From assembly GCA_050084985.1 (NCBI GenBank), contig JBITNC010000001.1, positions 133,176,001-133,240,000 of the forward strand: a stretch of 64,000 nt of DNA, in the 5' to 3' direction. A model generated the notes under the pieces. It made no database searches. It saw only the letters and a list, made by a program, of their open reading frames with translations, and was not told where the DNA came from. This document shows positions 19,871 to 46,932 of the stretch, piece after piece. How positions within the stretch are numbered: the stretch's first letter is position 1; the number at the start of each line of letters is the position of its first letter. The DNA is from Nageia nagi. Its lineage: Eukaryota; Plantae; Pinophyta. Both the position numbers and the translations under genes were made by a program.

Positions 19871-22800
19871 TTTGTATTAGGGATGATTTTAGGTAGCAAT
19901 GCCTTGAATGTTAGAATAATGAAAAAGCAAAATACTTTTAATCTCTCTTTTCTCAACAAAAAATAATAGATATACTAAAATTTGAAAAAGGTGATTATTG
20001 ATAACCTTAAAAGATAGAGATAGGACCACTCTTATATGTGTTGTTTTATAATTATGCACCTATAAAAAGATCAAATATTAAGAAATAACTTTGGTTCATA
20101 TAGCCTATAGCACAAGCATATATGGTCCATGAAATAATTATCCAAGGCCCTCAGAATTAAGATTTCTAAAATCTCTTCATAAGAATCAAGCATTGTAAAA
20201 TATCATTTATTCATTAAAAGACCCCACTACATCAATTCTACATAGAAGCTAAACCAATGTTGCTATAGTTGTTAATAACCTATGAACTTTTGGTCATGGT
20301 ATATAAAAAGACACCAAAATGTAGGCATGCATATTAACTATCTTATCCTTGTGAGAACATATTAACAATATAATAGTAGAAAGTGTTTATTGAATAAAAA
20401 ATGAAAAATGCCTAATCTGAATTTCAAATTACTTTGTAACTCAAATATTCAAAGTTTCTATGGTAACTTTAAATATTCTATTTAATAGATTAGAAACCTG
20501 ATCTACTTTTTTCTAAATTTCTAATCTTTTTGTTCTTTTTATGAAATTTTAGAAAGAAAAGAAAAATATTTTGGCTTAAAAAAGATTTAATATACATATC
20601 AAATAATATAAATAATAATAATAAGTGGAAGATGTGGTGTTTCTTGAATATTGTCTTAAAGATAACTCCTAAATCATTTTCTGATTCAAATATTTGATGG
20701 TTAAATGGTAACTTGAGATGCATTATATAATATATTAGTCACATCCTTCACATCTTGCTACATTCCCATTAACCTATATGCTTTTTATTTAAGAGTAAAT
20801 TCTTTACATAAATTAGTATCTAAAACGTTATTGGCATGAGAAAGTGGTAATTTTGGGAAATAAAAAAACTTAAGTAGAAGTCATCTCTTTTACAGTTTAT
20901 ATGTTATTTTAGAAGTCTAAGAAAACTAAGTTTTTATAGTTGTATTATTCTTAGATCATTTGAAAGATAGGTAGGAAATAAAAGGGATTTGGAAACTCAA
21001 GATAAAATTGAAAATAATGAACCATGTAAATAGGCACATTTCCTTTTTCTAGACTTTTAGCTAGTCTAACTCTATAATGATTGAAAGCAACCAAGAATGC
21101 AATATCTACCATTTAGATAGGTGGTCAATGTAGAATGATAAACATGTTTCTAGTGATAACTTGTTCTTCCATAGTTATCAAATAAAGGTTATGTATAATA
21201 TATAAAGATGTAGTAAGTAAGCCACAATATCAAGGGATACAAATCGAAGATAAACTAAAATGAACAACATATACTTCAACATAGAACTCTAAATTACACC
21301 TATAATTACAAAATTATAATAAAAAAAAATAAAAATATTTAGTAATAATAGTGAAGAATCAAACACATTTAATAACATATTACATACTATAATAATAGTG
21401 TACTTAGTTAAGGTCAATACCTCACCTATATTTTCATGGAGGTTGAAGAACATGTCACACCATTTGCATGAGGGAAAAGTTGAGGGAGAGCACCTACCAC
21501 ATCATCTTGAAGGATAAAATCAATGAAGAGAGACATCAACCTAGGATCCATTGAGATAACAAATGGAGCTAAAGCTAATGGATACAAGTAGTAGAGGAAG
21601 ATGATCAATGTAGGCAAAGCTAAGGGAGATGACAAGTGGAGGCAGATCCAAGGAAGACAATAGGAAAAGGTGAACCACATGGGTGCTAATGGAGCCAAAG
21701 ACTTGAGAATATGTGAACCACTATAGGGATCAAAATGATTAGGAAGAAAATGAAATACATCCAATGCTTGATCCCCCACCTCAAACATAGGTGCAATGTA
21801 AGAGGAGTTAATATGGAGTTCTATGTAGAAAGTGGGAGAAATATGGAGTGGACTAATGGAGAAGTATGCATTGAATGTTTCTTTGTGCTCATTGAGGGTG
21901 GAAAATACATCAGTTAACACACATCCATTGTTGGAATGTATAATGCATTATTGTAAAGGTTTTATAATAATCTTTTATGTAAGTTCACTAATACTTAAAG
22001 GTATCATTTGATACCTTAAGTATTTATGTGAATATGATAATGTTACTTGTCCTACACTCCATGTCATGAGCGTGCCCCTAGGGTAAAAGGATGTGCATGT
22101 CATGCTTTTGTACATTAGGTAAAAGGGTGATCCAAAGAGGGATTTTGGCCTATTAATAGAAGGCTCCCTCTTTAGATCAAACACCAACTTTTGGAATAAA
22201 GCTATGCTATAGGATAGTGTTTAGGAGATGAGTTAGGAGAATTGTAAGAGATACATGTTTGTGAATGAAGTGAGATCTAGTTAGTGGATGTACTCCTAGT
22301 TGGATGAACCACTTACATCTTGTGTTATCTTTGTGGGATTGATTTCTGAGTTTGTTAGATGTGTATTGTGAGCTTTTTGTGGTATTAGTATTTTAGAGTT
22401 GTTCATGTTATAGTTCAATGCCAACCTCCTATGTTACTTGTATTTTTTTAATTGCTAAAATGTAAAAAAAAGGGGTTAGTGTACAAAAAAAAGGAGAGCA
22501 TTATTTTTTCATATTTTTTTTACATATTATTGCTATTACTAACACTATTTTAAATGTAATTCTTTGCTTAAATAAATAATAGTATGTTTCTTTTACACAA
22601 ATTTTAGTGTAAAATATATAGAAGGTAATTACATTTTTTTACCTTTTTTTAAAAAAAAATTTACCAAGTTTTTTCAAAAGTATGGTTTGCATTTAAATAA
22701 AAAAGGGGGGGTTATATATATATAACTTTTTTGTTCAAAAGGGAGTGGGAGCATTTTTTATTTCAATATTTTTTTGAAAATAATTATTTTTTTTACTAGC

Positions 22801-27250: not shown

Positions 27251-29366
27251 GTGAAGTTTGAATTCTTATGTTGAATTCATGTTTGTGATGATAATTTCAC
27301 CCCTAAGAGGATTTCATGCTATATAGCATTGATTTTGTTGTGCACCTTCATGGTAAGTTCACTCTATGTGAGGAACTTGTACAAATTTTTAAAGCAAAAA
27401 AGATTGGCCAATATAGCACTATTTAGTTATCCATGTGTGAGGAACTCTTGTGTGTTTTTTGACATTATTCAGTTATCCATATGTGTGGAACTTGTATGTG
27501 CATGCTCTATTTTGTAATGATAATCAACACATGTTTTTATATATAGTAGGTGACTATGAGTTTTGGCTTAGCATCTTCATGATGATTTATAGTGCACCAT
27601 TGATCAATTCATGATGGCATTTGTGTAATTCATATATCCTTGTTGATATGAATATGTTACATCTAATTGATCCTGTTATTCAAAATACTTATGACTTGTA
27701 GGTTCTTTTGATATTGTAAGTTACTTACTTCAAGTATGTAGGCTCTTGGAGACTCTTCATGACTTCCAATTGGATGACTACTTCATGTACATTAAAACTA
27801 GTTGTAGTTAATGATTGTATTTGGTAAAGTAGTGAGTCTCAAACTAGATATTTATTACTTTACAAATATGTAAAAAGTTTTCATCTCTGTTGTATTTTTT
27901 TGAAGGAGAACTCTCTTATTTTCTCTCCTTCTCTCTTATTCGCTTTATCCCAATATTGCATTAAGGGAGAGTGTTGGAATGTATAATGCATTATTGTAAT
28001 AGTTTTGTAATAATACTCTATGTAAGTTCAATAATACTTAAGGGTATAATTTGATACTTTAAGTATTTATATGAATATGATAATGTTACTTTTCCTACAC
28101 TCTATGTCATGAGCATGCCCCTTGGGTAAAAGGATGTGCATGTTATGCTTTTGTACATTGGGTAAAAGGGTTATCTAAAGAGGGATTTTGGCCTATAAAT
28201 AGAAGGCTCCCTCTTTGGATCATACACCAATTTATGTAGTAAAGCTATACTATAGGATAGTGTTTGAGATGTTAGAAAAATTGTAAGAGATTCATGTTTG
28301 TGAATGAAGTAAGATCTAGTTAGTGGATGTATTTTTAGTTGGAGGAACCAGTTACATATTGTGGTATCTTTGTGAGATTGCTTTGTGAGTTAATTAAATG
28401 TGTATTGTGAGCTTTCATGTGATCTTGGGATTTTCTAGTTGTTCATTTTATAGTTCAATTCTCTAATCCATCCACCCTAATGTTAGGTATAATACATGCA
28501 CCAATTGGGGATAAGCCTAATCGATGATCGATCAGCCCACTAGAACCACAAAATAGCAACATGTTAGATGAATTAGACCCTAAAACATAGAAAAATGGGT
28601 GTGATTGAACTAAAAATGAAAATTCCCTCATCCAAGCTAGCATGTTGACAATAGATATTTTTTTATTTTTTATTTTGTCCATTTAAAATACCATGTAGAT
28701 GTGCAAAGTTAGGGTTCTCCACTATGGGATCCTCACCCATAGTAGAAGAATAAGTTGAGGTATAATATTATTATCTAATATATTAGGTATTCATGGTAAA
28801 ATTGAAAAAGTAATAAAAAATAAATGAAGTAATGAAATTTACCTTCATCATAGGTTGATAGAATCTTGACTTAAAAAAGTGTTAATTGCTAAGAAGTTAT
28901 CTTTTAGCTACTTCAAAGAATGTAAATACAAGAAGAAACATACATCCACATAAAACTAAGTAACAAAAAGATTAGAATAAATTGTAGTCATTTTATTAAT
29001 GGATTTCAAATAATTTTATAGAGAAATTGTAAGGAAACTCTCATAAGCTGCAACACTAATTAATGCATGGTGATCCCCTTTGATTTTCTATAATATGTCT
29101 AAATAAGTATCACAAATCAAAATAATCTAACTTGAGCATCGCCATCTATCTTCAAGATAATATAAAAGAAGAAAACAATGGTAAGAAAAGGAAAGAGAAA
29201 ATAAGGAAAAACTACAAAATGCTTAAAGATTAGGATATATCCTATACCTTAACCCAAAAATCTGGACTCTAAACTCCTTTAAATGTGTCCTTTATTATTT
29301 TATTTATAGTTTTATTTGGTGTATCTTGTGATGATCCATTTTATCATGATAACACACTTCATTTAA

Positions 29367-30055
29367 CCCTCCATGCATAAGGGTCATTGGGGCATGCCTA
29401 TCATGACATGCCATGGCCTTGCATGTGATGTGGAGTTAATTGAACTTTGTTTATTTTAAATGCTTTTCAATGTTCAATTAACCATGGTTTAAATAGCATT
29501 TGATTAGTCTACTCTCAATATTGCTTGATTATCCATTAACTAGATTCAATTAGACATCATGTCAATAATGTTCAATTAGCCCATAATGTCGAATGACTAA
29601 TTGGGCTAAGCATCATTTGATTAACCCCCTGATATCAATGACATTCGATTATCTCATGCTTGCCATGTTGAACATATATCTCACATATCAAGGATATCAT
29701 TAATATCTTATACTAATCATACTATGTTTATGTAGTTTAAATATAGGTCAATTAACCCATACATCATATCACCCCACCTCTAGTTTTGAATGTTGCCAAC
29801 CATTATACTTGAACATGCTAATACCAAGGTTAATCAAACTTCAATTAGATCACTATATTTAATGCCTAGGCTAGTCGAATTATATTCATTGGGTTCATAC
29901 ATAAGTTGATTAACCCATACATCATATCACCTAACCTCCATTTTGAATGTTGTCAATCATCGTACACACATTTGTTAATGTAGAGGTTATTCAAACTTCA
30001 ATTAGAATCTATACACAAGTTTATTAGCCTCTAACCCATATGCTTAAACATGTGC
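29367..30055 (+). repeat. Left terminal inverted repeat
   Basis: Aligns to the reverse complement of 43809-44478 as far as aaacatgtgc; contains many GATTAACC/CAATTAACC motifs. Confidence 0.9.
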
Positions 30056-30556
30056 AAAGATCCAATAGTTACTTATGCAGTTTAAATGAATTTTGATTAA
30101 CCCACCTTTATAAATCAAAAGCTAATCATTTTCATTTGCATTATTTTGTGCATGCTTGAACATGGTGTTGCAGGGAGCTCTTAAACAAGTAGTGAAGATC
30201 AATACCACATAGGCTTTTCCAATTCTTGTGCTATGTTTATTCATTTTGTAGTACATGAATGTTCAAGCATGCCATAGGTTTTTTTTTATATATGTATTTT
30301 TCTTGTTGCACTCTATGAAAGTTTGCTTCTTATAGTTTGTCAAAAAAATCTTGTAGTTTTTTTTACATATGTATTTTGCATCACCTATTTTGAATAATTG
30401 TGATCATTGCATTCCATGATATTACATTCTATGTGTTTTGCATTTTCTATTTCTCAACTATCCTCTTCTCAAATCTAAAAAATACCCAAACTTGGGTATC
30501 TTGTTGTGCTCCACACTTGGGTATTTGAAAAGGCACCTTCAAAATAGTTTGCATCA

Positions 30557-30881
30557 CTAATAATAATATCCACAAGAACATTCACCATACTTCAAATTAT
30601 TTAATTAGTTCAAATCCCTCACAACACTATCCCTTGCAATAATCTTGGATATAAACTTGGTTGCAATAATGCATTCATTACATACTCAAAGATTCTTCAC
30701 AACTCTAATAAAAATTCTAAGGGGAGTCTTCATCGTTAGCCTCGACATCTCATAACATAGGTATTGTATTTGGAATATACATTATTTCCTTCATCTTACT
30801 TGATAATTTATCCAATTTTCCATAGATGTCCTATGTTTTTTGGTGTGATATATCTCATACAAGAAAAGCATGTACCCTTTT
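30557..30881 (-). pseudogene. PPR E+/DYW domain fragment, copy 1 (HSE segment deleted)
   Basis: Minus strand reads KRVHAFLV...VVRDLN*LNNLKYGECSCGYYY* (compare VRDxNRFHHFxxGxCSCxDYW). Confidence 0.8.
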
Positions 30882-32789
30882 GTCATTTAAAAGTATAAAT
30901 AGTTAACACAAGCCTTCAAAATCCAATTTTGGCTACAAATATGGCTTTCAAGTTCCAAGGTTCAATAACATATTCATGTCATGAAATTTAATATATAAAA
31001 ATTTCTAGGGTTCACTTATTCTAAATTTACCCATGTGGGATCATGAAAACCCTACCAGAAAATGAATTCAATTATTAGGGTTTGTTGCTACTATTATCTT
31101 TTAAAATTTAGTATTTTATTGTAACTATGCGAATAAGAAAGTAAGTCTTTGAACAATGGAAATTAGGCAACATGAGTCATTTGTGAAGGAGATATTTGTT
31201 GAAATGAGTAGACTCTTCATTTATCTTGGCAAATAAAATCTTTGAAAATAATATGAAACTTGTTAATAACTCATAGGTGATCCATCAACAACTTTCAAGG
31301 GGTTATAAATTCATGAAAAACCAATAAAAAAAGTGGGAATTCTTTTTTTTTTAATATTTTTCTTGCTCTTTTAGCCAATTTTTTCAAGTGTTACCTTAAA
31401 TAGAGGGAAGAAAACTCTACCTTTTGGCAATTTCAAGGAAGATTCATGCTACTTTGCTATAATCTTCATAATTTATAATGTATATTATATTTTATCTTTG
31501 ATTTTAAGTATCTTTCATACATGTTGCATAAATTAATTAAGATTCAAAAAATTCTACTAGTCTATTAAAGAAAAAATGTTGCATAAATTCATTAAGATTC
31601 AAGTATCACATTGAGAGGTTGCTCAATTTTCATAAATCAAATGAAAATTCAAGTGTTGAATTATGTCCATTTTTGTGTCTTTTAGGTTTATTATGCTATT
31701 CCATTTTTTTTAGTTTTAGTAATCCCCTTTTATTTCTTTGGTTTATAACAATAGGTGCACATAAATATTTATTTAACATGTGAAAACAAAATTGTAGTGG
31801 TGTTTTCAACATTACAAAGACAAAATTTGGAAAGACTATATGTTTTCCAATAATAGTAGTCAATCTCCAAAGCCAAACGTAGCCAAGCTTATGGTTCCCC
31901 AAGTGTTTGTTTTGATTGATTTGGGAAGATTACTAGAGAGTTTGGTTAACATAAAAAAAAACTTATTAGTTTAATCTTAATTACTCATTATAATTGACTT
32001 AGTATGATTACTAGTAAATATCTTAGTCAATATTAAAGAAGTTTTTAACTTGAATGTGATTACTCTATGATTGAGTTGGTCTATACTATGATCTAATGAA
32101 TGCTTGTATGATTATATATTTTTAGAACATGTGAATTTGGAATTTAAACATTAAATGGTAAATCTATACTAGTAAATAAGTGGCCTTGTTGTGTTGTACT
32201 CCTTGGTTTGGTGCTTTTAAAGAGATCAAAATAAGAATCCCTTCTCAACATATTTTCACAATCTCTATTTTATAAGATGCTTCTTCATATTGTATTTCCA
32301 AGAGAGATAATCATTAATTCTTGAATACACTCATTAAGGTTATAGAACTTATGAGAATCTTATGGTTTCATGGGAGTATAATCATCCAATTTTGAATTTC
32401 ATATCTTATGAGTTGGTGCATTCCTAATATCCTATAATTCCATACATTGCTCCAAATTTTAGCCTTTATCATCCTTATTGTTGAAATTTTAGATTAATAT
32501 TTGACCAAAAATTGCCTACTTTTCCTTGAATTTATATTAATATTTGGGATTCTAATTAACCCCTTAATGTCAACTTACATGGGCACATAATTGCCAACTA
32601 TGTGTCACCTTAGCATAAAATAGTAATAAACAACACAACACAAATGATGAGTGAATTGGAACCTGAACTTTTGTGTACTAACCCATTAAATGTGTGGGTA
32701 TCATGGTCACACCTAAAAGGATCATTACTTAAATTTTTTAATCTGATAGATCTTGGAGAAGAAAATCAAGCCTCTATTAGTTCATTTTT

Positions 32790-33420
32790 TACCAAGTTAG
32801 ATCCCTCACAACAATGTCACTTACAACAATCTTCAATATAAACTTGGTTGTAGTGTGGAAGTCATTGTATACTCAAATATTCTTCACAAATCTAAGAATG
32901 GTTCCAAGGGGGAGTCTTTAACAACCTAAATGTAATTTCAAAATTTTCACTATGCTGGCAGAGGAGCAATTCTTCACATCTTGTAACACAGGTATTGTGT
33001 TTGGAATATACCATATTGCCTTCATCTCATTCGATAATTTCTCCAATTATACATATATGTCCTATGTTTTTTGGTGTGATATGTCTTGTACAAGAAAAGC
33101 ATGTACCCTTTTTTCAACTTCAATCCAACTACATCCAAGTATCTTCCTAATTCCTCTATATTTCGTCAATGGCATTACTCTTAGAAAATCATCATCAATT
33201 GCCTAATTTAGCATAAATATATGAAAGAATAAAATAAGATGAAGTATTTTTAGGCTCTAACAAAAAAGGATTATTGCCACAAATTCCTTTATTCATACAT
33301 TCTTATGTGATCTACAAGCACCAAGCAAATTGTGCATTCTTCCAAATTTTGCATACATGTCTATTAGAATACTCTCAACCTTAACATTCAATGAAATACT
33401 ATTTTCAATTGTATCTACTT
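32790..33420 (-). pseudogene. PPR S/E/E+/DYW fragment, copy 2
   Basis: ILIDMYAKFG / LLGACRSHKN...LSYIYAKLG...GIRKILGCSWIEVEKRVHAF...LLCQHSENFEITFRLLKTP...TTTKFILKIVVSDIVVRD. Confidence 0.88.
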
Positions 33421-34609
33421 AAAAGTATCTAGATTCATAGGTTTTAGAGTTATTACTTCAATTGAAAATAGTCATGATGAAATTTTTAGGTTGATAAAGT
33501 GATTGTTTCTCACAACAAGGATCTGAATCCTATTAAATTGAATTTGGGCATTGGGGCTTATTGTATAGAGGTATGAATGGATCAATAAAATTATATTTTT
33601 GAAATTAGTTCCTTTTCTATCAGATAGATTTGAGTTACTTCTTAATTTTTGACATAATTATTTTGGCTTATGAATTATTTGATATATTTCATAATTTTTT
33701 TATTTTACTTGAATTTTAAACAATAATACATTTTAATTCTTTTATTTATGTATAATTGAAAAGTCAAAAATTTGACAATCATTAGGAATTTAGATTTCTA
33801 ATGTTTATAGAGAGATCTTGTGCTTGGTGATCCCAAAAGTGCCCAAATAGGGCCTCATTTCCTTAATATACATTGAGACAAGGACTAACTCATCTTGTTT
33901 ACAATAAACAACAAACTCTTAGTGATGGAATGGTTTATAGTCCTTATAGCAATGTTACTTGCAATAGTCATGGAGATAACTTGGTTGTAGTATCACAAAT
34001 CTAAAACAAACTCTAATAAAATCTTTTTTAGTTATCCCCTAGTAATCACTAAATGAATACTACCCATTCTTGAAGTGGTAGAAAGGATTGATATCCTTAA
34101 AATAATTTTGGCAATTATCTCTTACTCTTTAGTTCCTCATAATTGAAAAATAAATAAGCACAAAACTGTAAGTTGGAAGGATCTAAAATTGCTTTATAAC
34201 ATACATAAATTCTTTCAATTAAGGAGCCTAAAATTGTTTATCAAGATGCAAAGAATGAATCATAATGAAAAGGACTTATAATTGTATAAAAACATCCAAT
34301 TGTATACACTAAAAGGAATGCAATTTAATTGATAAAATTCTTCATCGAATGGCATGCTCAAGCTGTGAAATGACTACAAAGTATGCATAAGATATATTGA
34401 ATGGGTCTAAAATATATTTGAAAAAATGATCAGGTCATATGTATTAGGAAAGAATTATTAGAAAATTATATAAATTATTTATACTAAAGAGGGGTCCTTT
34501 AGTTTATTAACAACATGCCCCATTTGTATGTAATAGATTTGTACAATATATATATATATTGAAGATCTTACGAACTATTTGAAAAAATGTCTAAATATTT
34601 TCATTTGAA

Positions 34610-34980
34610 AGGATCTAGAAATATATTTGACAAAATGTTTTTCTTTGGAAATACATGATACAAATGTAGTTTCATGGATTGCAATATTTGCTAGTTGTAA
34701 AAAAATGGATTTTCTTAAGAGAATCTAGAGACTTTGAAACAAATGCAATTTATTATGTGTAAAGATAATCCCTACAAATTTTTACAATAGTCTTCCAACA
34801 TGTGCCATTGTGGGAGTCTTTATGGAAGGTATGTTCATTCATTAAAGAGTATTTGAAAATGGTTTCTCATTGAATATTATGGTTGTGAATGCCTTGATAG
34901 TGAGTGACCTAATAGACATGTATGCATAATGTGGGAGAATATGCATGGTCCATAAAATGTTTGATAAGATGTATGATGTC
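34610..34980 (+). pseudogene. PLS-class PPR fragment
   Basis: NVVSWIAIFASC; SLPTCAIVG; IH*RVFENGFSLNIMVVNALI; LIDMYA*CGRICMVHKMFDKM. Confidence 0.8.
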
Positions 34981-35209
34981 ATTCTAAGAAAAGTTGCAAC
35001 TAAATGAACTTAATTTCAAATTCCAAGTACTCAATATCATGGTTTGCAGTCTACTATACTTCTAATAGTCTCAAAAGGTTTTACCAATATAAGGGATCCT
35101 AGTACACCATTTTAGATAATTCTTCTCTATTTGGGTCAAAAAAGAAAATTTTCTTTATTATTTATACATTTTTTAAGTTCATATAAGCTTTTTTTCATTA
35201 CATAGAAGA

Positions 35210-35545
35210 AAAATTATGTTGTTAGGTTTGGATCCCTAATGCTTCATCCATGTCCTTACTCTTTGAACACATATCCACACACATAATTCAAGTTTTATGG
35301 ACATCTTGAAAATGAAGTTCAAATCTTACTCAAGATATCCTACATATCCAAGAAGGTCAACAATGCATGCATAATGATTCATCCTAGGAATAATGTGATA
35401 AGGGCCACTCATGCCATTAAAATATTTATAGTCCTTATACACTAGAGGTGCATGGTTGCATGCAAGTAGAACATAAACAAATATTATGTTATTAGGTGTG
35501 GATCCCAAGTGCTTCGTCAATGTCCTTACTCTTTAAACACATATC
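35210..35545 (-). pseudogene. PPR L2-S2 fragment with a local ~65-bp duplication
   Basis: PNNIIFVYVLLACNHAPLVYKDYKYFNGM...PRMNHYACIVDLLGYVGYLE; 35212-35277 resembles 35480-35545. Confidence 0.85.
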
Positions 35546-35689
35546 TTCCAATCTAAATAAGTTTTTTTTGGATTTTTTGGCACTTGTTCCAATCTAAATA
35601 AGTATTTTAAGGGTGTTTGGGTCAATCACATGATTTGTTCATTTTGTCAAATTGGCAAGATATAATACATTTTATCAAATGGTCAAGGG

Positions 35690-37915
35690 TACAAAGTGGG
35701 AGAAGTTTTTCCAAATACCTATCCAAGAAATGGTTGATAAGGAGTTTTTTTCTCATCTTGGTCTATCATGGATTGAAGTTTAATGCAAAGGAGGTATGAA
35801 AGATTTGGTGTAGGTATACCTATTGAAAGATTAGATGAAATCAAGAGAGGTGAAGAATATCATCTAGATACCCAATCCTTTTTTATGTAGAATAAAATGA
35901 TTAACAACATCCATAATAAAGCTAATGGTAGCCACCCTCAAAATTTATCTACATTAAAGAAACACAAAATGTTAGTGTAGTTTTTATGTTTCATTTTGCA
36001 TAAAACATACCTTTTGATGCTATAAAATGTAATACATTTATTAAATACTATATCATTCATAAATTGTATTTATTGGTGCTCGTATGGGTACCAAGATAAG
36101 AGGCATACCCCATTTACACCAAAAAGGATGAGGGTTTTTTTTTTAAAAAAAAAGAGGATGCTTATGTCATTTTTTGGTTAAGGTATATCATCACCTTCCT
36201 ATTGTTGCCTTCATCACTTATAATTATTTCAAACATGTGGATAATGAATGAGAGCCTTACCATGGTGTTTATGACCCATCAAACATTGGTTAGATAATGT
36301 ATGTACCATATTTATCACCTAAAGTAGTAGCAGTTATGGAAGCATTATTTTTCATAGGTATCTCCCATGACCAAATTATTGAAGGGGAATACTTGAGTAA
36401 ATTGTTGGGTGGATTACCAATAGATAGAGATGAATTTATAATGAGAAAAGATGTATAAAATATACATATTAGGACTCAATAAGGTATGATGCAAAAACAT
36501 AACATAGATTCATAAAGTGTTAATCTTTGGGTTGCAAAGCTAAAAGAAAATATCTTTATTTATCGATGACCACATAATAGGAATGAGAGTTTTGTTTTAT
36601 ATTATAAAATTACATGGATGTTGGAGAATATGGTATCATGTGGACACATTCGTATTATTACAATGGAATTAATAATTACTACTAACAAGTATGGGATAAG
36701 TAAACTATCTTATTTTTCTTTTCAAAGTGTAAATCAACATGTGTTAGAATTTTTAAAAAGGGTTCATTGTAAATTGTAGTACCCATTATATACATTGCTA
36801 GTCTTTGATGAGTAAGATAGTGGTGTGCATATTTCATGGGTCATTACACAACATAATTGGATAGATGATGTTTAATAATGGATACAATTGTTACATGATC
36901 TGTGTGAAGAATGTTAATTGGATTGGAAGGTGGAAGCCTTCATGATATATGATTGTCTAGCTGATATAGAAGTGATATAGTAGATAAATTTTATTGTTAT
37001 CCTATACCTTGCATTAAAAACTCCCAAAATACCTATAAAAATTTATGATGGTATTTTTGTATACTAAATGATTATGTAATATGATCCATTCTTCAAGTAT
37101 TCATGAAAAGTTATTTTTGAATGAATGAAATAGGAGGATCTTCAACTATTAGTATCTACTATGTTGTTGATAGGTGTGCAAGCTATGGTTGTAAAATATC
37201 ATCAAGCTTATATCTAAAAAATATTTATACACAAATATATTGTTCAAGTTGGGATATATTATGCATAGCATTGACAATGCAAGCACCATAAATAATCTTA
37301 TTTTTGATTTCATCAATGAATTTATGTATGAGAAGAGGTTCATAGAGTACTTCATTAGTAATTGGATGGAAAAAGATAAGTTTGGTAAGTTCCAATCCAT
37401 AGTATCCTTCAAGAGACTTTAGAATATATTTATACCATAAACAATGTTACTGAAGCTTAATTGTACTTTTTCATGTGTTTCACAGTCATGTGGGAAAAAA
37501 GCTTTTGAGATTTTGATCATGCCAATCAAAAAAAATAATAATTCCATTGAGGCTTACGATTTTTAGTTAAATATAAAATTTATAAAATACATGACTAAGA
37601 AGGGTTCAAGAAGATTGGATAATGTGATTGATAAACTTCACAACAAAGTAGAGCCATTCTACAAGCATAGAGATAAGTTAAAGAGATACCATTTTTAAAA
37701 TAAATATTAGAGAAAAAAGAATCTTAAAACTACATGGGAGAGAGCTCTTCATATTTTGGATTCCCATTATTCTCCCTATGAAACTATTCAAGATGCATAT
37801 TGTGTACAAAGCCAAACATATCAATCCACCAAATACCTTGTAGCTAATTATGGTGAACATGTTTTTACATGTGAATGTATGTGGGTTATATGAGGTAATG
37901 TTTGCAAGCATTCAT
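35690..37915 (+). pseudogene. Decayed Mutator-like DDE transposase with C-terminal SWIM zinc finger (At4g13970/At1g60560-type family), with introns
   Basis: Collinear motifs IPIERLDEIKRGE, YWCSYG, KRGCLCHFLVK, KHVD..PYHG, SVNLWV, TNKYG|YPLYTLLVFDE*DSGVHISWVI, WKVEAFMIYDC, LLCC**VCKLWL, FIEYFISNW, NNSIEAY, RRLDNVIDKL and SWIM TCECMWVI*GNVCKH. Introns ~36696-36779 (donor mutated to AT), ~36980-37135, and 37385-37485 (GT-AG, phase-compatible). Confidence 0.85.
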
Positions 37916-38028
37916 AAAGATCAAAACACTACTTAAATATGTATGGACCATGTATATTGGGTTTGATTTGAATCCAACCCCTCTTAGTGAAAATGCCCTT
38001 GATTTTAATGAACAACTTATGGTTGAAC

Positions 38029-38092
38029 AAACAAAAATTTCTCCAAAAACACAAATTTCTCCATAAACATAAATTTCTCCACAAACACAATT
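38029..38092 (+). repeat. 18-bp tandem repeat (aaacacaaatttctccan, ~3.5 copies)
   Basis: Direct inspection. Confidence 0.85.
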
Positions 38093-39764
38093 GTGAATGA
38101 CTTAATTGCTTAAGAAATAACCAAATAGAACTTTCTCCACAAATGAGATCTATATTTGATATGTATATTGATATCATAAAGAGCATTCAAGATCAAAATA
38201 AAGGTTAAAGATTCATATCTATGGCTAGAGAATTAGAAAGCTCAGATGGATTCAATTTTGTACATGATTCTAATAGATCTCTAAAAAGGAAAAGAATTGT
38301 AGTTCTCCAATATACAAGAGAAAGAATAGAGGAACAAGAAATATAGAATTGGTAAATCTTAATACTCATGGGAGTGAGTACAATAACTATGACCTTTCTA
38401 TATTAAAAAAATATGAACATACACCTTGCCCCTCAATTCCTTTTTCTTTATATTCTATAAAAGATAAGATATGAATTGTAAAACATTTGTATTTACATTT
38501 GGACATAAATATTTTTCATGTTCTCATATTAATATTTGTATTTGGTTTTAGGTGTTATAGATACTAGAATATCATCTTGTTATATCCTATCATTTGAAGG
38601 GGATTCATCTAATGCAGCATCCTTGATAGCAATTTTAGAATGCAATATTGATGTTTAGAATGAAAATAATATTATCTTTAGTTTCAATCCAAGTTAAAGA
38701 TACCCAAAAATAGTAATGAACTTGTATTCAATTATGAAAGTATAGTACTTTTTAGAACCAATACCTATGTAAGATACACCTTATGGTGTCTATTTAACAA
38801 TTGTGATATTCTTCTTTCTCTAATGTTATAATGCAATATGGCAATTCAATATTATTAACATCTTTTTAAAACTTCTACTTGAAGTATGTTGCAAAGTGGT
38901 TAATTTTGAATGTTTGCTTATAAGTAATTATTGATATTAGCTGTAGTTATTAAATCATGGGCTTTCTTTCTACAATATCATTATTATATTCTTATGTAAG
39001 TAATATCATCCTTTAAGCAAAAAATTACCTTCCATGATGAAAGAAAGTTCCTATGGTTATGATGTGGTTGAAAAATTACATTTTGTGATAAAGCTAATAT
39101 GATGAATGATTGTAAAACTTTAAAAAAAAATATAGTATCTTTAAAAAAACACATTTTTTTGGGTTATAGCCATCTTGTTCAACCACATTTTCGATGTTCA
39201 ATTAACCCATATATCATAAATGCACTTTGATTAACCCAATCTATTAGTTATAACTTGGATTATACATAACTTGTTTAACCCATATCTTTGATTATTTCCA
39301 AGTTCTATGGGTTATACATAGCTCATTTAAATTTTATCTTCAATTAAAGTTCTTTGGGTTATATGCATATCATTTAACCCATTGTAAACACATTTCGATT
39401 ATACAATTTAATATTCAAGTTCTTTTAGGTTATACGTAGATCAGTTAACCATACATCATAAACATACTTTAATTAACCACAATAAAAGCTATGAATGTAG
39501 TTATATCTAGTTTGATTAACTTGTGATAAACATACTTTGATTATAACTAGAGTTACAAAAAATTTGCATTTCTTATTATGAGCAAGTTTTGAGTAAAAAT
39601 GCAAGAAATGCAAAATTTACTCAACACTTAAAACAAGAAATGCAAAATTTGATCAAAACTTGCTTACAGCAAGAAATACAAAATTTTCTCAAAATTCACA
39701 ATGTGTCTACATGAACAAAAACAAATGATCCAAACCTAATTTGATAAAATTTGCTCAAAACTAA

Positions 39765-40060
39765 TGAATTATTTGACAAGATGCATGGTGCAAACCTAGT
39801 TTGATGAACTACAATTCATAACTATAGCAAGGATGTCTCATCAAAATATAGTCTCATGGACTATAATAATCATTATATTTGCACATATTAGGTTATTTGA
39901 GTAGAATGTATAAACTTTTTAAGCAGATACCATTATTAGGAGTAAATACAACCTCTACAACCTTAGCCAACATTCTTCTAGCATGTCCCACCATGGGAGA
40001 TCTAGAAGAAGTTATAGATATACAAGATAGACATGTATGTAAAATATGGAATAAAAAATA
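39765..40060 (+). pseudogene. PLS-class PPR fragment
   Basis: ELFDKMHGANLV; NIVSWTIII; LFKQIPLLGVNTTSTTLANILLACPTMGDLEEVIDI; DMYVKYG. Confidence 0.8.
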
Positions 40061-43000
40061 ATAATAATTAATGAAAGCTCCATTGCTTGTAAAATTAGAT
40101 TGCAAATTCCACAAGAACACCATTCAAGTTACAATTTAACTAGTCACATGCAAATTCCCCAATTCCAATCATAAAAGTAAGCAATTAGAGCAAATAATAA
40201 CATCTAAATCCAATAAAAAATATAACACCATGCACTATTATAAAATCCAAAACAAATAATATAATTTTGCAATGAATAATCAATAATAGGTACATTGAGT
40301 TATTCCCTCTTCGAAGTGATGACCTACCAAGTATACAAATATTTTGAATTAGATAAATGATGATATGAGGATTATATGTCTAACCCATGATCCTATTTAT
40401 ATGTAAATATAACTAGTGGATATATGATTATTCATAGATTAAATATTCTCTATTATGGTCTAATCTACAAAGCTACCTCTTTTTCCTCTGAAAAATGTAG
40501 TGAAAATATATTATCCAAAATGGATTTCTTGTAATGTAGTTTGTTGATGTATAATTACTTCCATAAAACTTGTCTTACTTTTACATTAAACTCTAGTATA
40601 TTAATGTATAGTTATTTCTTTAAAACATGTATTATTTTATACATTAAAGTGACTTACATATCCTTTCCCTTGGAGCAAGAGCACATTTCAACAAAATTCA
40701 CATGTAATGTTCTACATGTTTTGCAACTGACTACTCTATTTTTCCAAAGAAAAAGGATTTAGTTTGAAATGAGATTGCAATAAAGTTTAATTGCTATATC
40801 AAACCTATGAAATTTGATAAGAAGGTCACTTCCAACTTGATGAAGTCATGATCAAGGGAACTGATAATAATTACACAATATGATCATGAGAAGCAAGGTG
40901 CAATATATGCATATTTATTGGGTATGGTTAAGAATTTAATACTTGTTACTTTTATGATCCTAATAAACAAAATGCTATAAATAGAAAGAACATAAATTTT
41001 GATGATAGACTTATTTCTATTTTTTCTAGCTCTTTCTAAGTTCCTTCTCATATGCTGCTAAAGTTTATACTATACAAGCACTCTTCTTAAACCTGCAACT
41101 TAGGAGATTGTGATCATCATCATTTGTAGTTAATACTATCAAAGTTTTATCAAAATATCTATTCATGCATTATATGTCACTGGGTTTACATAAACAAAGA
41201 ACCACTAGTGTAAAAACCTAAAGGAACATGTTGATTTGTATGGAATTTACAAAATAAAGTTTAACAAAATATTAAACAATATGACAAATGACTATTCATT
41301 GGGGTTTTTTCTGAAAGATGAAAATTAGTTATAATACATCTACAAAAAGATGGTAAGTATTGTATTTTGTTTACATGTATTATGATTATCATGATTAGGT
41401 TTATATGAATTGGTAAATTGTGATCTTATATTTTTTAAATTACTCTTATGCACTTTCAGAATTTACATTTACATATTTGTCTTACATGTTGAAATTGATT
41501 TGAATTTATTTATCTATGTTAGGATGCTACCATAATTACCATGAAAAGTTTCATTTTTACCTGGTCCTTCAAAACCATTAATTGACCCATGCATGCTTGC
41601 CTTATAACAATCAAAATGGACCTTAGGATTTGGAGTCAGAAAGTGTTACTAGAATTCTCTTGGATGATGAGGAACCAAGGGACTTCACTATTTCTTGGAG
41701 ATTCAAGGAATGAACCAATGATTCTAAGACATAGGCTGATCTACAACATCCATATATTAGAAGTGAGTTACTTACATTACCAATTAATGAGTTATTGATT
41801 AATGATTAAAAACCTAATTATCAATTAATTAGAAAATTATGGATGTCATTATTATGTTTTGGGGTGTAGGTGTTTATTGAGAAATGTAAATGTGCAAATA
41901 TAAATTTCACACCACTCATTTTATTTTACTATTAGAGTATGGACATTTGACCTATTTTTTATTTGGGTTGATAGTAGTAGCAGCTCCATACTTCCCATTT
42001 GGGTCATCAATAGCTTCCTACTTCTCATTTAGGTCTTCACCAGATCCTAGATGACTAAAAGGGCATGGAATATTGATATGTGTTAATACCTCTTTTTGAT
42101 GGTGAACATATCTAAAGATGAGGTGGCCACTTTGATAGAATCCTACACCTAATATGATGCATTTTTGTATGAATGGGATTTTATGTGAATGGATTCTTAT
42201 GTGAACTATTCAAACTTGGATACAATTAATAATAGTAATTTATCTTCAAATTATATATACATGAAACTAAACCTTTTCATGATTCATTTTACTATATCAC
42301 CAAATATTAACTCATAGTAACAAATACTAATTGCAAAGTTTTAAATATAAATATTTAATTATTTTACAAATTATTGATTTATCCAATATATACTTATTAT
42401 ATAAATTTGAAAGACAAGTTAAACATTTTTTTTGGTAAGGTAAATGTTTAATTAATATAAGTGGGTTTACAATGGACCCAAAAACCATATACAATAGGAT
42501 AGGATAAAATATTAAAAAAATTCCCACATTGGCTTCATAAACATATTAATCCTTTATTATACAATATGAAGCTACTACTATAGACATATGCCAATATTAT
42601 ATGCCACCTTAAACTAAGCAGTTGATATGCAAAATTTGTTACCATGTGAAAAAAATCCATTAACATTTATTTTTAGGTATTATAGGCTCTTTGGGTCTAT
42701 CACCAATAAGAAATAATTTTTTTTGATAGCATGGTAGGCTCTAATTAATTCTATTGGGTCTCAGGTGAAGATTTCATTTTCTCTTAACTTGGATTAGTAT
42801 GAATTGAAGAAGAATGCAGTAGGTAGGTAGCTCCATCATTGATCCAATCTCACATTCGTAGTATAATCTTTTACTTTGCATTAAAATTTGGGGTTGCTTG
42901 CATATTTGGTACATTGTTTAAATTAAATATAATTTTCACTACCATTGAATCATCCATAGGTGCATGTAGGTCCTCCAAACCTTGACTTTTCCTTTTGAAT

Positions 43001-43808
43001 TTCCCTATTTCTAATTCCTTTAATTTTTCTAGTTCCATACCTATCTCTATTTCATGTTCCTCTTCATAAACTTGATCCTCTGTTGCTTCCTCTCTATAGG
43101 TTTCAATTAAATCCACAAGGGCATTAGCCAACACATACTTATAGATAACAATAGTAGACCCTAGCTTTGGAGAACTTTTGAATATAATCTCTTTCCCTTT
43201 TTCATCGACCTAATGAGAGAACTACATAGATAGAATGGAAAATTCATAAAGCTACCAAGAAAATGGTTCACTAAAGATAAATGGAGATCATTTATAAATA
43301 TGTATATCCTCTCAAGAGTCATATACTTCATCAAAACATGTTGAATTGTGACCCATTTCCTTGTTTGGTGCCTTGCTACATATCCTTCATCTAGAGGTGG
43401 AAGTTCACAAACTTTAGATATAAATAATTTGTTATTATCCTATTTATCATTTGTTTCTCTATGAACCAACCTTCCAATTTGAGCAATATTGATATCTATT
43501 GCAATTATATTTTCATAAAAACTAAAGGAAAATCCTTCAACTTCCACCTGAGCATTATTCCAATATGCCACTACTTCTTAAGACAATGCAATATCATGTA
43601 CCATGAATGCCTTAATGAATCAGTCTAGACTATTGTTGCATAAATCATACCATAATATTCTATCCTTCTTAATACTTGAGCATGTTCCAAGTTCCACTCG
43701 TAATATATTTCCACCCAAGATTGGAAGTGAGTTACTTTCCTTATAGATTAATGCGTTATCGATTAATGAGTAAAAACCTAGTTATTGATTAACTAGCTAA
43801 GTACCTAG

Positions 43809-44478
43809 GCACATGTTTAATTGTATGGATTAGAGGTTAATCAACCTATATTTGGAGTCTAATTGAAGTTCAATTAACCTCTACATTAAAAAAATGCATG
43901 TACGATTGTTGGAAATGTTCAAATTTTTAGGTAGGGTGATATGATGTATGGGTTAATCGACCTATGTATAAACCCCATAAATATAGTTCGATTAACCTTG
44001 GCATGAGTACGTTGTTGGCAAAGTTCAAAATTAGAGGTAGGGTGGTTTGATATATGGGTTAATTAACTTATGTTTAAACCACATAAATATAGTTCAATTA
44101 GTATAGGTCATTAATGACATCCTTGATATGTGAGATATATGTTTAGGATGGCTAGTATGAGATAATCAAACATCATCAATACCAGGGGGTTAATCAAGCA
44201 TCATCAATTTTAGGGCTAATCAAATGATGCTTACACCAATTGGTTATTCGATATCATGGATTAATAAAAAATTATTGATATGCTAACTAATTGAATGCTA
44301 ATTCATATTACATAATTAAATGGTGTTGAAGGTAGACTAATTGAATGATGTTTAGACCATGGTTAATCAAACATTGAAAAGCATTTGGGCTTAAACAAAG
44401 TTTGATTAACTCCACATGGTATGGGGGGCCATGGGATGCCATGATAGGCATGTCCTAATGACCTATGTGCATAGAGGG
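43809..44478 (-). repeat. Right terminal inverted repeat
   Basis: Reverse complement of 29367-30055; contains repeated GGTTAATC motifs. Confidence 0.9.
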
Positions 44479-44614
44479 TTAAACTAATCATGTTTAGTTT
44501 GGAATAATTGAAGTGCCTATAACCCCATGGCATGGCTTGACAAGCCATGCATGCATACTAAAGGGATAGTGTGTCAGATTATAGGGGAGAATTCTAGAGG
44601 CTATATAACCAATG

Positions 44615-44617
<3 letters not shown>

Positions 44618-44664
<47 letters not shown>
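44618..44664. repeat. (TA)n microsatellite
   Basis: Perfect ta run. Confidence 0.95.
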
Positions 44665-46110: not shown

Positions 46111-46932
46111 ATCAATTTTGAAGACACAGCAGAAAAATGAAGAGAGGCATTGATAAAAGCTGAAAAAAAAGGGAGAATAAGAAATTTGGAAGTTTGATAA
46201 AACACTAAGTTAGCCCTTTGTTCACTTTAATTTGCAAGTTTTATGGAAATTTTGGATGTTTTTCTTTACCACATTAGATCAACTATATATAGAATATTAC
46301 AATATGTTTCCAATCAATAAATCTATTATCTGCTATTCTCTACAACATATCTTTATTTTTACAATCTTACATACCAAACAATACATTTAAAATTATTAAT
46401 TAGGAAAAATCATAATAAAAGTTTTTATTAGATAATTTTAGTTACTATGATGTTTGCTGTGAAAATATTAAGTGGAATAAATTAATGGATGCAACTATCC
46501 TCCCTCCAAATTGGGTCATAATTTGGAGGAAGGATAACCTTCCTTTATAATAAATGGAAGGAGTCATTCATTATAATTAATTTATTTGACCCAATATTTT
46601 CATAGCAAACATCATAATTAGATCATTTGCAACTAAATTTATCTAATAAAAACCCTTATTACAATTTTTCCTAGACTAATCATTTTACATGTTGGATATG
46701 CAAGATTATAAAATTAAAGATATGTTGTAGAGCATAGCAGATAGTAAATTCATTATTCTATATAACATTGACTCAATGTGGTAGAGAAACATCGATAATT
46801 TCATAAAATTTGCATATGAGTGAAGAGAGGGTAAACTTGATGTTTTAGAAAACTTCCAAATTTCTTATTCACCCATTTTGTCATCTTTTTCGATGTTTCT
46901 CTTCCATTGTTTGCTATGTCTTCAAACTTGAT
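46111..46932. repeat. ~820-bp foldback (arms 46111-46512 and 46520-46932, 7-nt loop)
   Basis: Centre cctccaaatt-gggtcat-aatttggagg; gaataagaaatttggaagttt pairs with aaacttccaaatttcttattc; tctacaacatatcttta pairs with taaagatatgttgtaga. Confidence 0.9.

What the first reader, a model, noticed from the sequence alone, without database searches (positions are those of the whole stretch)
29363..44482. 15-kb DNA transposon combining piggyBac-style TTAA|CCCT ends with a Mutator-like SWIM transposase
Seen: ~680-bp inverted repeats 15.1 kb apart whose similarity stops at tTTAA|CCCT (left) and AGGG|TTAAa (right). No 8-11-bp flanking duplication is present. Known: a TTAA target with CCY termini is the piggyBac signature, whereas Mutator elements make ~9-bp TSDs, and piggyBac is not an expected seed-plant element. 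The only transposase-like gene inside is MULE/SWIM-type, not piggyBac. Inference: this may be an undescribed TTAA-targeting lineage of long-TIR plant DNA transposons. Caveat: TTAA is palindromic, so one copy cannot distinguish a TSD from the TIR tip.
Basis: partly seen in the sequence, partly recalled or inferred. Interest (0 to 1): 0.9.

Follow-up and report, generated by a model that had tools for sequence, protein, structure and literature searches.

The report
Old dead Mutator-like transposon, TTAA unproven
This is a real but long-dead 15-kb cut-and-paste transposon of the Mutator-like kind in an AT-rich plant genome, and the "piggyBac-style TTAA target" is most likely just the outermost copy of a short motif that the element repeats all through its own ends.

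Summary
The inverted repeats are real. The arms are about 690 bp (29363-30055 and 43809-44482), 15.1 kb apart and 80% identical over aligned columns, with mostly transition differences.

The gene inside is real but dead. Blocks at 35673-37914 (+) align collinearly, exon by exon, with an intact relative in a metagenome contig (L001). The window copy has at least 18 in-frame stops and damaged catalytic residues. The relative shows the D, D, CxxH, E motif order plus a CxCx8CxH SWIM finger. One of its exons hits Pfam ZSWIM1-3_RNaseH-like at E=0.002, below the curated cutoff.

The TTAA-target reading is not supported. TTAACCC is a recurrent, oriented motif of the element: 9 of the window's 21 copies lie in the arms and 4 more in an internal block. 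The left tip matches the longer motif TTCATTTAACC. Arm similarity also runs past TTAA.

No clear 9-bp duplication survives; two registers give 6/9. The ends stay unresolved from one copy, and no other copy could be fetched.

First readers flagged the same SWIM gene family at seven other places in this genome (their notes are unchecked).

Verdict: an ordinary, decayed long-TIR Mutator-like element of a divergent SWIM lineage.

The parts
29363..30055 (+). Left terminal inverted repeat (about 690 bp). Similarity to the right arm may extend outward to 29351. Contains an internal partial tandem duplication (29735-29849 ~ 29893-30006) and repeated TTAACC(C)/CAATTAG/TGATTA motifs.
   Evidence: arm alignment; motifs; internal duplication
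43809..44482 (-). Right terminal inverted repeat. Similarity may extend outward to 44494. Contains a 106-bp unit in 1.9 tandem copies at 43900-44100.
35673..37914 (+). Decayed multi-exon transposase pseudogene (RNaseH-like core + C-terminal SWIM finger). Homology blocks: 35673-35887, 36177-36701, 36786-36971, 37132-37392, 37528-37914. At least 18 in-frame stops. Catalytic and signature residues: first D changed (GMDSTF in L001 vs TMELII here), second-D site FMVDDA vs FMIYDC, CxxH lost (LCIWHV vs LCC**V). SWIM reads CECMWVI*GNVCKH.
   Evidence: tblastn of L001 exons on the window, E 1e-28 to 2e-10, collinear. phmmer hits P0002/P0003. Pfam on the relatives.
38029..38090 (+). 18-bp tandem repeat (3.4 copies) just downstream of the SWIM block. 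The relative P0005 also carries short tandem peptide repeats after its SWIM finger.
39190..39560 (+). Internal block of TIR-like sub-repeats, in the same orientation as the left arm. It holds four TTAACCC and two TTAACC and has weak similarity to both arms (E about 1e-6 to 1e-5). Possibly a relic of an extra internal TIR or a transposase-binding cluster.
42874..43439 (-). Two adjacent open frames (112 aa and 92 aa) near the right arm, convergent with the transposase gene. The 112-aa frame is the longest ORF in the element and has a 72%-identical paralogue (P0006, 81 aa) on a contig of another public assembly. Function unknown; possibly a second element gene.
   Evidence: no Pfam or Atlas hit
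30596..33500 (.). Material that probably does not belong to the original element. Direct repeats at 30596-30885 and 32784-33116 (71% identical), and a stretch at 32700-33500 that is moderately to highly repeated in the genome. Contigs of other copies join the two repeats, skipping about 2.2 kb.
   Evidence: direct repeat, tables 2 and 5 (depth 136-2717, joints with about 2240 offset)

Best explanation
An ancient, inactive copy of a long-TIR cut-and-paste DNA transposon of the Mutator (MULE) superfamily, from a divergent lineage whose transposase has an RNaseH-like DDE core with a CxxH motif and a C-terminal SWIM zinc finger.

Inferred mechanism, by analogy with MULEs: the transposase bound the short motif (TTGA/TTCAW)TTAACCC, which is repeated in one orientation through both ~690-bp arms. 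It cut at the tips and reinserted with a staggered cut.

The TTAA at each edge is most likely the outermost copy of that motif. That makes it part of the TIR, not a target duplication. The true target duplication has decayed beyond recognition, or survives as a 6/9 remnant.

The copy is dead. The arms have diverged by about 20% (K2P about 0.24, my calculation from the counts). The gene has at least 18 stops and damaged catalytic residues. Unrelated repeats have been inserted into the interior.
For: Shown:
- The arms are real, collinear and low-copy. In the one same-species run, summed contig depth is 3-20 over the arms, against about 2x10^5 for a neighbouring high-copy repeat. Two contigs of other copies match the arm at about 84%.
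- The window gene aligns exon by exon, in order and on one strand, with the intact gene of L001.
- L001 carries, in order, GMDSTFSTNKYG, FMVDDALAE, LCIWHV, NNSVEAYH and CECPWSIRGNTCKH.
- L001 exon 2 hits PF21056 ZSWIM1-3_RNaseH-like at E=0.002 over profile positions 54-119.
- SWIM PF04434 scores E 0.007-0.015 on P0005 and L001. The nearest Atlas clusters are SWIM proteins, score 0.93.
- TTAACCC occurs 21 times in the window against 9.0 expected (0 of 100 shuffles reach 21). Nine copies lie in the arms (5 left, all +; 4 right, all -), the two tips included. Four more lie in the block at 39202-39380.
- The left tip TTCATTTAACC is one of only four exact matches to TTSAWTTAACC in the window, and all four lie inside the element.
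- The base beyond TTAA also matches between the arms.

From the literature: long TIRs (14-640 bp), SWIM fingers and 8-11-bp TSDs characterise MULEs (PMC6446971). MULE TSDs are often AT-rich strings such as TTAAAATTA (PMC3310237, Table 5).
Against: - The Pfam MULE model PF10551 was never hit. The PF21056 and SWIM hits are below Pfam's curated cutoffs.
- The N-terminal FAR1/WRKY-like finger is only my reading of a Cys/His pattern.
- No convincing 8-11-bp duplication is present. The 6/9 match outside TTAA differs only by transversions, which fits poorly with the transition-dominated decay of the arms.
- The right tip fits the extended motif less well (TTAGTTTAACC).
- That the gene and the arms belong together is inferred from position only.
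- 5'-CCC...GGG-3' directly inside TTAA is exactly the piggyBac arrangement.
Confidence: 0.6

Rival explanations
1. One reading: a previously undescribed plant lineage whose Mutator-like SWIM transposase integrates specifically at TTAA and makes a 4-bp TTAA duplication. The element proper would run CCCT...AGGG.
For: TTAA is present 4/4 on both sides, directly outside CCC/GGG. No clean 9-bp duplication exists. Kolobok, which shares the C/DxxH signature with MuDR, hAT and P, makes TTAA duplications (PMC9587614), so a TTAA-specific relative of MULEs is not absurd. Other unchecked first-reader notes in this genome mention TIR families with 4-bp duplications (s1-857985).
Against: TTAA is palindromic, so a TIR tip looks identical. 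TTAACCC and the longer TTCAWTTAACC recur inside the arms and in an internal block, so the edge TTAA looks like element sequence. The fifth base outward also matches between the arms. Every MULE group tabulated in PMC6446971 that has a stated TSD length gives 8-11 bp (one group is listed as having no TSD). No second copy was examined.
Confidence: 0.08
2. Same Mutator-like element, but the tips are exactly CCCT...AGGG and the target duplication is a decayed 9-mer, TTCATTTAA (left) / TTAAACTAA (right). It happens to end and begin with TTAA because MULEs favour AT-rich targets.
For: 6/9 identity in the 9-bp register at these tips. The three differences (one transition, two transversions) are compatible with 20% decay. 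AT-rich MULE TSDs that begin with TTAA are documented (PMC3310237, Table 5).
Against: P(>=6/9) by chance is 0.023 per register and about 20 registers were inspected, so about 0.5 such matches are expected. It also leaves unexplained why the left flank TTCATTTAA plus CC reproduces the element's own internal motif.
Confidence: 0.12
3. The arms and the SWIM pseudogene are not cognate. Either the arms belong to another, non-autonomous or unknown TIR family (or are two separate repeat copies, or an inverted duplication), or the Mutator-like pseudogene, the PPR-like fragments and other repeats are merely trapped between them.
For: The interior is a patchwork. It holds repeats of much higher genomic copy number, weak PPR E-motif and DYW hits and a gene far from either arm. 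There is no significant DNA similarity between the arms and the region upstream of the related gene in L001. Only this one copy was available for study.
Against: The arms are low-copy and collinear over 690 bp with sharp outer ends. Chance pairing of two solo repeats 15 kb apart is therefore unlikely. No other inverted-repeat pair flanks the gene. A block of the arms' own motif lies 1.3 kb downstream of the gene. First readers noted the same gene family between TIRs elsewhere in this genome, but these notes are unchecked.
Confidence: 0.15

Closest known systems
Mutator-like elements (MULEs) of plants with a C-terminal SWIM finger, such as the Jittery, MuDR and VANDAL groups (PMC6446971)
   Same: Long TIRs of hundreds of bp with sub-repeats and partial tandem duplication. 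A DDE RNaseH-like core with a CxxH motif between the second D and E. A C-terminal SWIM finger. A size above 10 kb with foreign fragments inside. A possible second, convergent ORF.
   Different: The Pfam MULE model does not recognise the protein; only ZSWIM1-3_RNaseH-like does, and only weakly. The tips read 5'-(TTAA)CCCT rather than the G-rich starts I recall for many plant MULEs (memory, not tested). No recognisable 8-11-bp duplication.
piggyBac superfamily
   Same: TTAA directly outside a terminus beginning CCC...GGG (PMC5381638: target TTAA; TIR starts C[C/A/T][C/A/T]).
   Different: No piggyBac-type transposase among 127 ORF pieces. The TIRs are about 690 bp long. [quoted passage not shown] TTAACCC also recurs inside the arms.
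Kolobok superfamily
   Same: TTAA-specific 4-bp duplications, and a transposase of the hAT/P/MuDR/Kolobok/Dada group that shares C/DxxH (PMC9587614).
   Different: Kolobok termini are 5'-RR...YY-3', whereas here they are 5'-CC...GG-3'. Kolobok is not reported from land plants (PMC9587614).
ZSWIM1/ZSWIM3-type proteins (Pfam PF21056 + SWIM)
   Same: The best profile match of the catalytic-core exon of the intact relative. Same domain order, RNaseH-like then SWIM.
   Different: The match is below the curated cutoff. This window's copy sits between TIRs and is decayed, so it is transposon-borne rather than a host gene.

Membership tests
Mutator/MULE superfamily | DDE RNaseH-like catalytic core recognised by a family profile | tested here: inconclusive
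   PF10551 (MULE) was never hit. PF21056 ZSWIM1-3_RNaseH-like scored E=0.002, 18.5 bits against a cutoff of 27.2, on exon 2 of the intact relative L001. Exons were searched one by one and the spliced protein was not joined. The window's own pieces gave no hit.
Mutator/MULE superfamily | [quoted passage not shown] | tested here: met
   L001 has FMVDDALAE ... LCIWHV ... NNSVEAYH in that order. The window copy aligns to all three but has lost W and H to stops. This rests on motif reading, not a profile score.
Mutator/MULE superfamily | Zinc finger, often a C-terminal SWIM (CxCxnCxH) | tested here: met
   CECPWSIRGNTCKH in L001 and CECMWVI*GNVCKH in the window. PF04434 scores E 0.007-0.015, below the cutoff. 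The Atlas neighbours are SWIM clusters.
Mutator/MULE superfamily | Long terminal inverted repeats (tens to hundreds of bp) | tested here: met
   About 690-bp arms, 80% identical.
Mutator/MULE superfamily | 8-11-bp target-site duplication | tested here: inconclusive
   No perfect repeat. 6/9 in two registers, chance P=0.023 each among about 20 registers. The best asymmetric match, 8/10, is at chance level for the number of combinations tried.
piggyBac superfamily | TTAA target duplication flanking the element | tested here: inconclusive
   TTAA is present on both sides. But it is palindromic and embedded in the element's own recurrent motif. No other copy or empty site was available.
piggyBac superfamily | piggyBac-type DDD transposase | tested here: not met
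   No such Pfam family among 127 ORF pieces of at least 38 aa covering the element on both strands. The only transposase-like gene is the SWIM type. Sensitivity is limited by decay.
Kolobok superfamily | Termini 5'-RR...YY-3' with TTAA duplication (PMC9587614) | tested here: not met
   The termini inside TTAA are 5'-CC...GG-3'.

The most novel reading that the evidence does not exclude
A seed-plant lineage of Mutator-like (RNaseH + SWIM) transposons that has switched from 8-11-bp duplications to TTAA-specific 4-bp integration with CCC...GGG tips. That would be convergent with piggyBac and Kolobok. The repeated TTAACCC motifs in the arms would then be pseudo-ends.
Probability: 0.08. Interest if true: 0.8.

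Novelty: new member of a known kind. Interest (0 to 1): 0.3.

Why it matters
If the TTAA reading were right, it would be the first TTAA-targeting Mutator relative and the first TTAA-type cut-and-paste family in a seed plant. That would bear on how target choice evolves in DDE transposases.

As the evidence stands, the element is an ordinary fossil. Its modest value is twofold:
- It documents a divergent SWIM/RNaseH-like transposase lineage that standard Pfam MULE models miss.
- Intact relatives exist (L001, P0005), and they could be the mobile kin of plant SWIM host genes. The link to At4g13970/At1g60560 proposed by first readers could not be tested here.

Tried and rejected
**Protein family searches**
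- Pfam on the window's ORF pieces gave nothing relevant.
- PDB sequence searches gave nothing.

**Homologue searches**
- The search for homologous proteins found nothing with P0005 residues 1-130 or with the 69-aa core piece.
- phmmer against 1.84 billion representatives with the 60-aa SWIM-proximal piece gave four hits. Two (P0001, P0004) are repeat or TPR artefacts and were rejected.
- The Atlas search on the 112-aa right-end ORF gave no usable hit.

**Fetching other copies**
The contigs behind P0002, P0003, P0005 and P0006, which would have held other copies, could not be fetched.
- Only one same-species run was served, and it has low coverage. Read laying on the left end showed other copies at about 84% identity. 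However, the 6 loose ends printed (of 535) all lie in a neighbouring high-copy repeat, so the family boundary could not be read to the base.
- Metagenome scan with alignment A3 failed, and with P0005 found nothing.
- Viral contig scans found nothing.
- The prokaryote genome scan gave one 30%-identity hit (E=3e-6) to the acidic tail in a Fibrobacteria MAG (L002). I did not inspect it and set it aside as probably spurious.

**Other tests**
- Search for the reconstructed empty site in the window: none.
- DNA similarity between L001's upstream repeats and the arms: only chance-level short words.
- Inner TIRs around the gene: none convincing.
- The At4g13970/At1g60560 link: no reference sequence was obtainable, and two papers that mention the loci are irrelevant.

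- No structure prediction was run, because every domain is split by introns.
Full report
**1. The observation**

The window is 30% G+C. Two inverted arms lie at 29362-30055 and 43809-44483.
- blastn gives 71% identity over 727 gapped columns, E=1e-117.
- Ungapped blocks are 80-86% complementary.
- A global alignment gives 516 identities in 645 aligned columns (80%), with 90 transitions and 39 transversions. From these counts I compute a K2P distance of about 0.24.

Each arm carries a partial internal tandem duplication. Nothing else in the 64 kb resembles the arms.

The arms belong to a low-copy family. In the one same-species run that was served, summed contig depth over the arms is 3-20. A repeat at 27900-28460 reaches about 2x10^5. 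Two contigs from other copies match the arm at about 84%. A chance pairing of solo repeats is therefore unlikely.

**2. The edges**

TTAA lies directly outside CCCT on the left (29363-29366) and outside AGGG on the right (44479-44482). The similarity does not stop there.
- The next base outward is T in both arms.
- Positions 29351-29366 versus the reverse complement of 44494-44479 agree at 11 of 16. This is not significant alone, but it is about the level of the arms.

I tested every symmetric boundary and duplication lengths of 2-11. TTAA scores 4/4. Two 9-bp registers score 6/9: TTCATTTAA/TTAAACTAA with tips at CCCT, and ACACTTCAT/ACTAATCAT with tips at TTAACCCT. Random 9-mers from the window reach 6/9 with P=0.023, so about half a hit is expected among the registers tried. 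An asymmetric scan found nothing beyond chance. The duplication cannot be read from this copy.

**3. TTAA is part of a recurrent element motif**

TTAACCC occurs 21 times in the window against 9.0 expected, and 0 of 100 shuffles reach 21.
- Five copies lie in or just inside the left arm, all on the + strand.
- Four lie in the right arm, all on the - strand. All nine therefore have the same orientation relative to the termini, and the two tips are among them.
- Four more, plus two TTAACC, lie in an internal block at 39190-39560 on the + strand. That block has weak similarity to both arms.

The contexts give a longer motif, TTGATTAACCC or TTCAATTAACC. The left tip reads TTCATTTAACC. It is one of only four exact matches to TTSAWTTAACC in the window, and all four are inside the element. 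The right tip fits less well (TTAGTTTAACC).

The simplest reading is that the edge TTAA is the outermost instance of a sub-terminal repeat, presumably a transposase-binding site. It would then be element sequence, not target.

**4. The gene**

The window's own ORF pieces gave no Pfam hit. A 60-aa piece next to the SWIM finger found two true relatives among 1.84 billion representatives: P0002 and P0003. A cluster mate, P0005, is an intact 332-aa C-terminal ORF.

A metagenome scan with P0003 fetched L001, a 3971-nt contig with 36% G+C. It holds an intact multi-exon relative.

Its exons, taken one by one, match the window collinearly on the + strand:

| L001 exon | Window block | E-value |
|---|---|---|
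| e0 | 35673-35887 | 0.002 |
| e1 | 36177-36701 | 1e-28 |
| e2 | 36786-36971 | 2e-12 |
| e3 | 37132-37392 | 2e-10 |
| last exon | 37528-37914 | 1e-24 |

Identity is 33-47% at the amino-acid level, and the window copy has at least 18 in-frame stops.

L001 shows GMDSTFSTNKYG, FMVDDALAE, LCIWHV (CxxH), NNSVEAYH and CECPWSIRGNTCKH in that order. Its exon 2 hits PF21056 ZSWIM1-3_RNaseH-like at E=0.002 over profile positions 54-119. SWIM PF04434 scores E 0.007-0.015. All of these are below Pfam's curated cutoffs, and PF10551 (MULE) was never hit.

By instruction, the exons were not joined into a spliced protein. A joined search might well pass the thresholds.

[quoted passage not shown] The C-terminal SWIM finger and the very long TIRs point to MuDR/MULE within that set (PMC6446971).

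In the window copy the first D, the W and H of CxxH, and one SWIM-internal residue are lost. The copy is dead.

**5. The rest of the interior**

- The stretch 30596-33500 holds repeats of far higher genomic copy number. Contigs of other copies join the two direct repeats across about 2.2 kb. This is probably inserted material.
- Two open frames at 42874-43439 on the minus strand, convergent with the transposase gene, include the longest ORF of the element. That ORF has a 72%-identical paralogue, P0006, on another assembly's contig. Its function is unknown.
- No inverted-repeat pair flanks the gene on its own.

**6. Comparison with known families**

- MULEs have TIRs of 14-640 bp, frequent SWIM fingers and 8-11-bp duplications (PMC6446971). 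AT-rich TSDs that begin with TTAA are on record (PMC3310237, Table 5).
[quoted passage not shown] No such transposase is present here.
- Kolobok makes TTAA duplications but has 5'-RR...YY-3' termini and is not known from land plants (PMC9587614). Here the termini are CC...GG.

**7. Verdict**

This is a fossil long-TIR Mutator-like element of a divergent SWIM lineage (confidence 0.6). The piggyBac-like edge is best explained as the tip of the TIR.

The TTAA-target lineage is not excluded, and I put it at about 0.08. Only other copies can settle it, and they could not be obtained:
- The single read-laying run did not resolve the boundary.
- Searches of the window and of the metagenome, viral and prokaryote collections gave no second copy of the arms.

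First readers have flagged the same SWIM gene family at seven other places in this genome. Those notes are unchecked and were used only as leads.

Noticed in passing
window 27900-28460 (copy at 21929-22419): A very high-copy repeat. Summed contig depth is about 2x10^5 in the one same-species run, against 3-20 for the transposon arms. An 88%-identical copy lies 6 kb upstream in the window.
   Followed up: no
window 46111-46932: An 820-bp stretch that is its own reverse complement at 72% (a large palindrome or foldback), 1.6 kb to the right of the element.
   Followed up: no
window 44617-44664: A perfect (TA)24 microsatellite 135 bp outside the right arm.
   Followed up: no
L001 1-3971 (metagenome contig Ga0316216_1000508): An intact multi-exon relative of the SWIM transposase sits on a contig of an environmental metagenome, so plant DNA is present in that sample. 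About 650 bp upstream of the first matching exon (e0, from 1405) lie three tandem units spaced about 120-150 bp apart (417-755) that share a CCTTATAACCCAAT core. These are possibly its own sub-terminal repeats.
   Followed up: partly
window 33336-33403 / 34873-34940: A 68-nt inverted-repeat pair (72% complementary) 1.5 kb apart inside the element, next to a stretch of high genomic copy number. It may be a small nested TIR element.
   Followed up: no
window 41756-41832 / 43720-43796: A 77-bp direct repeat (83% identical). One copy lies just inside the right arm.
   Followed up: no
window 35329-35532 (-): A 68-aa frame ending ...HYACIVDLLGYVGYLE reads like a PPR motif just upstream of the transposase gene. 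Pfam gave no hit on it.
   Followed up: partly
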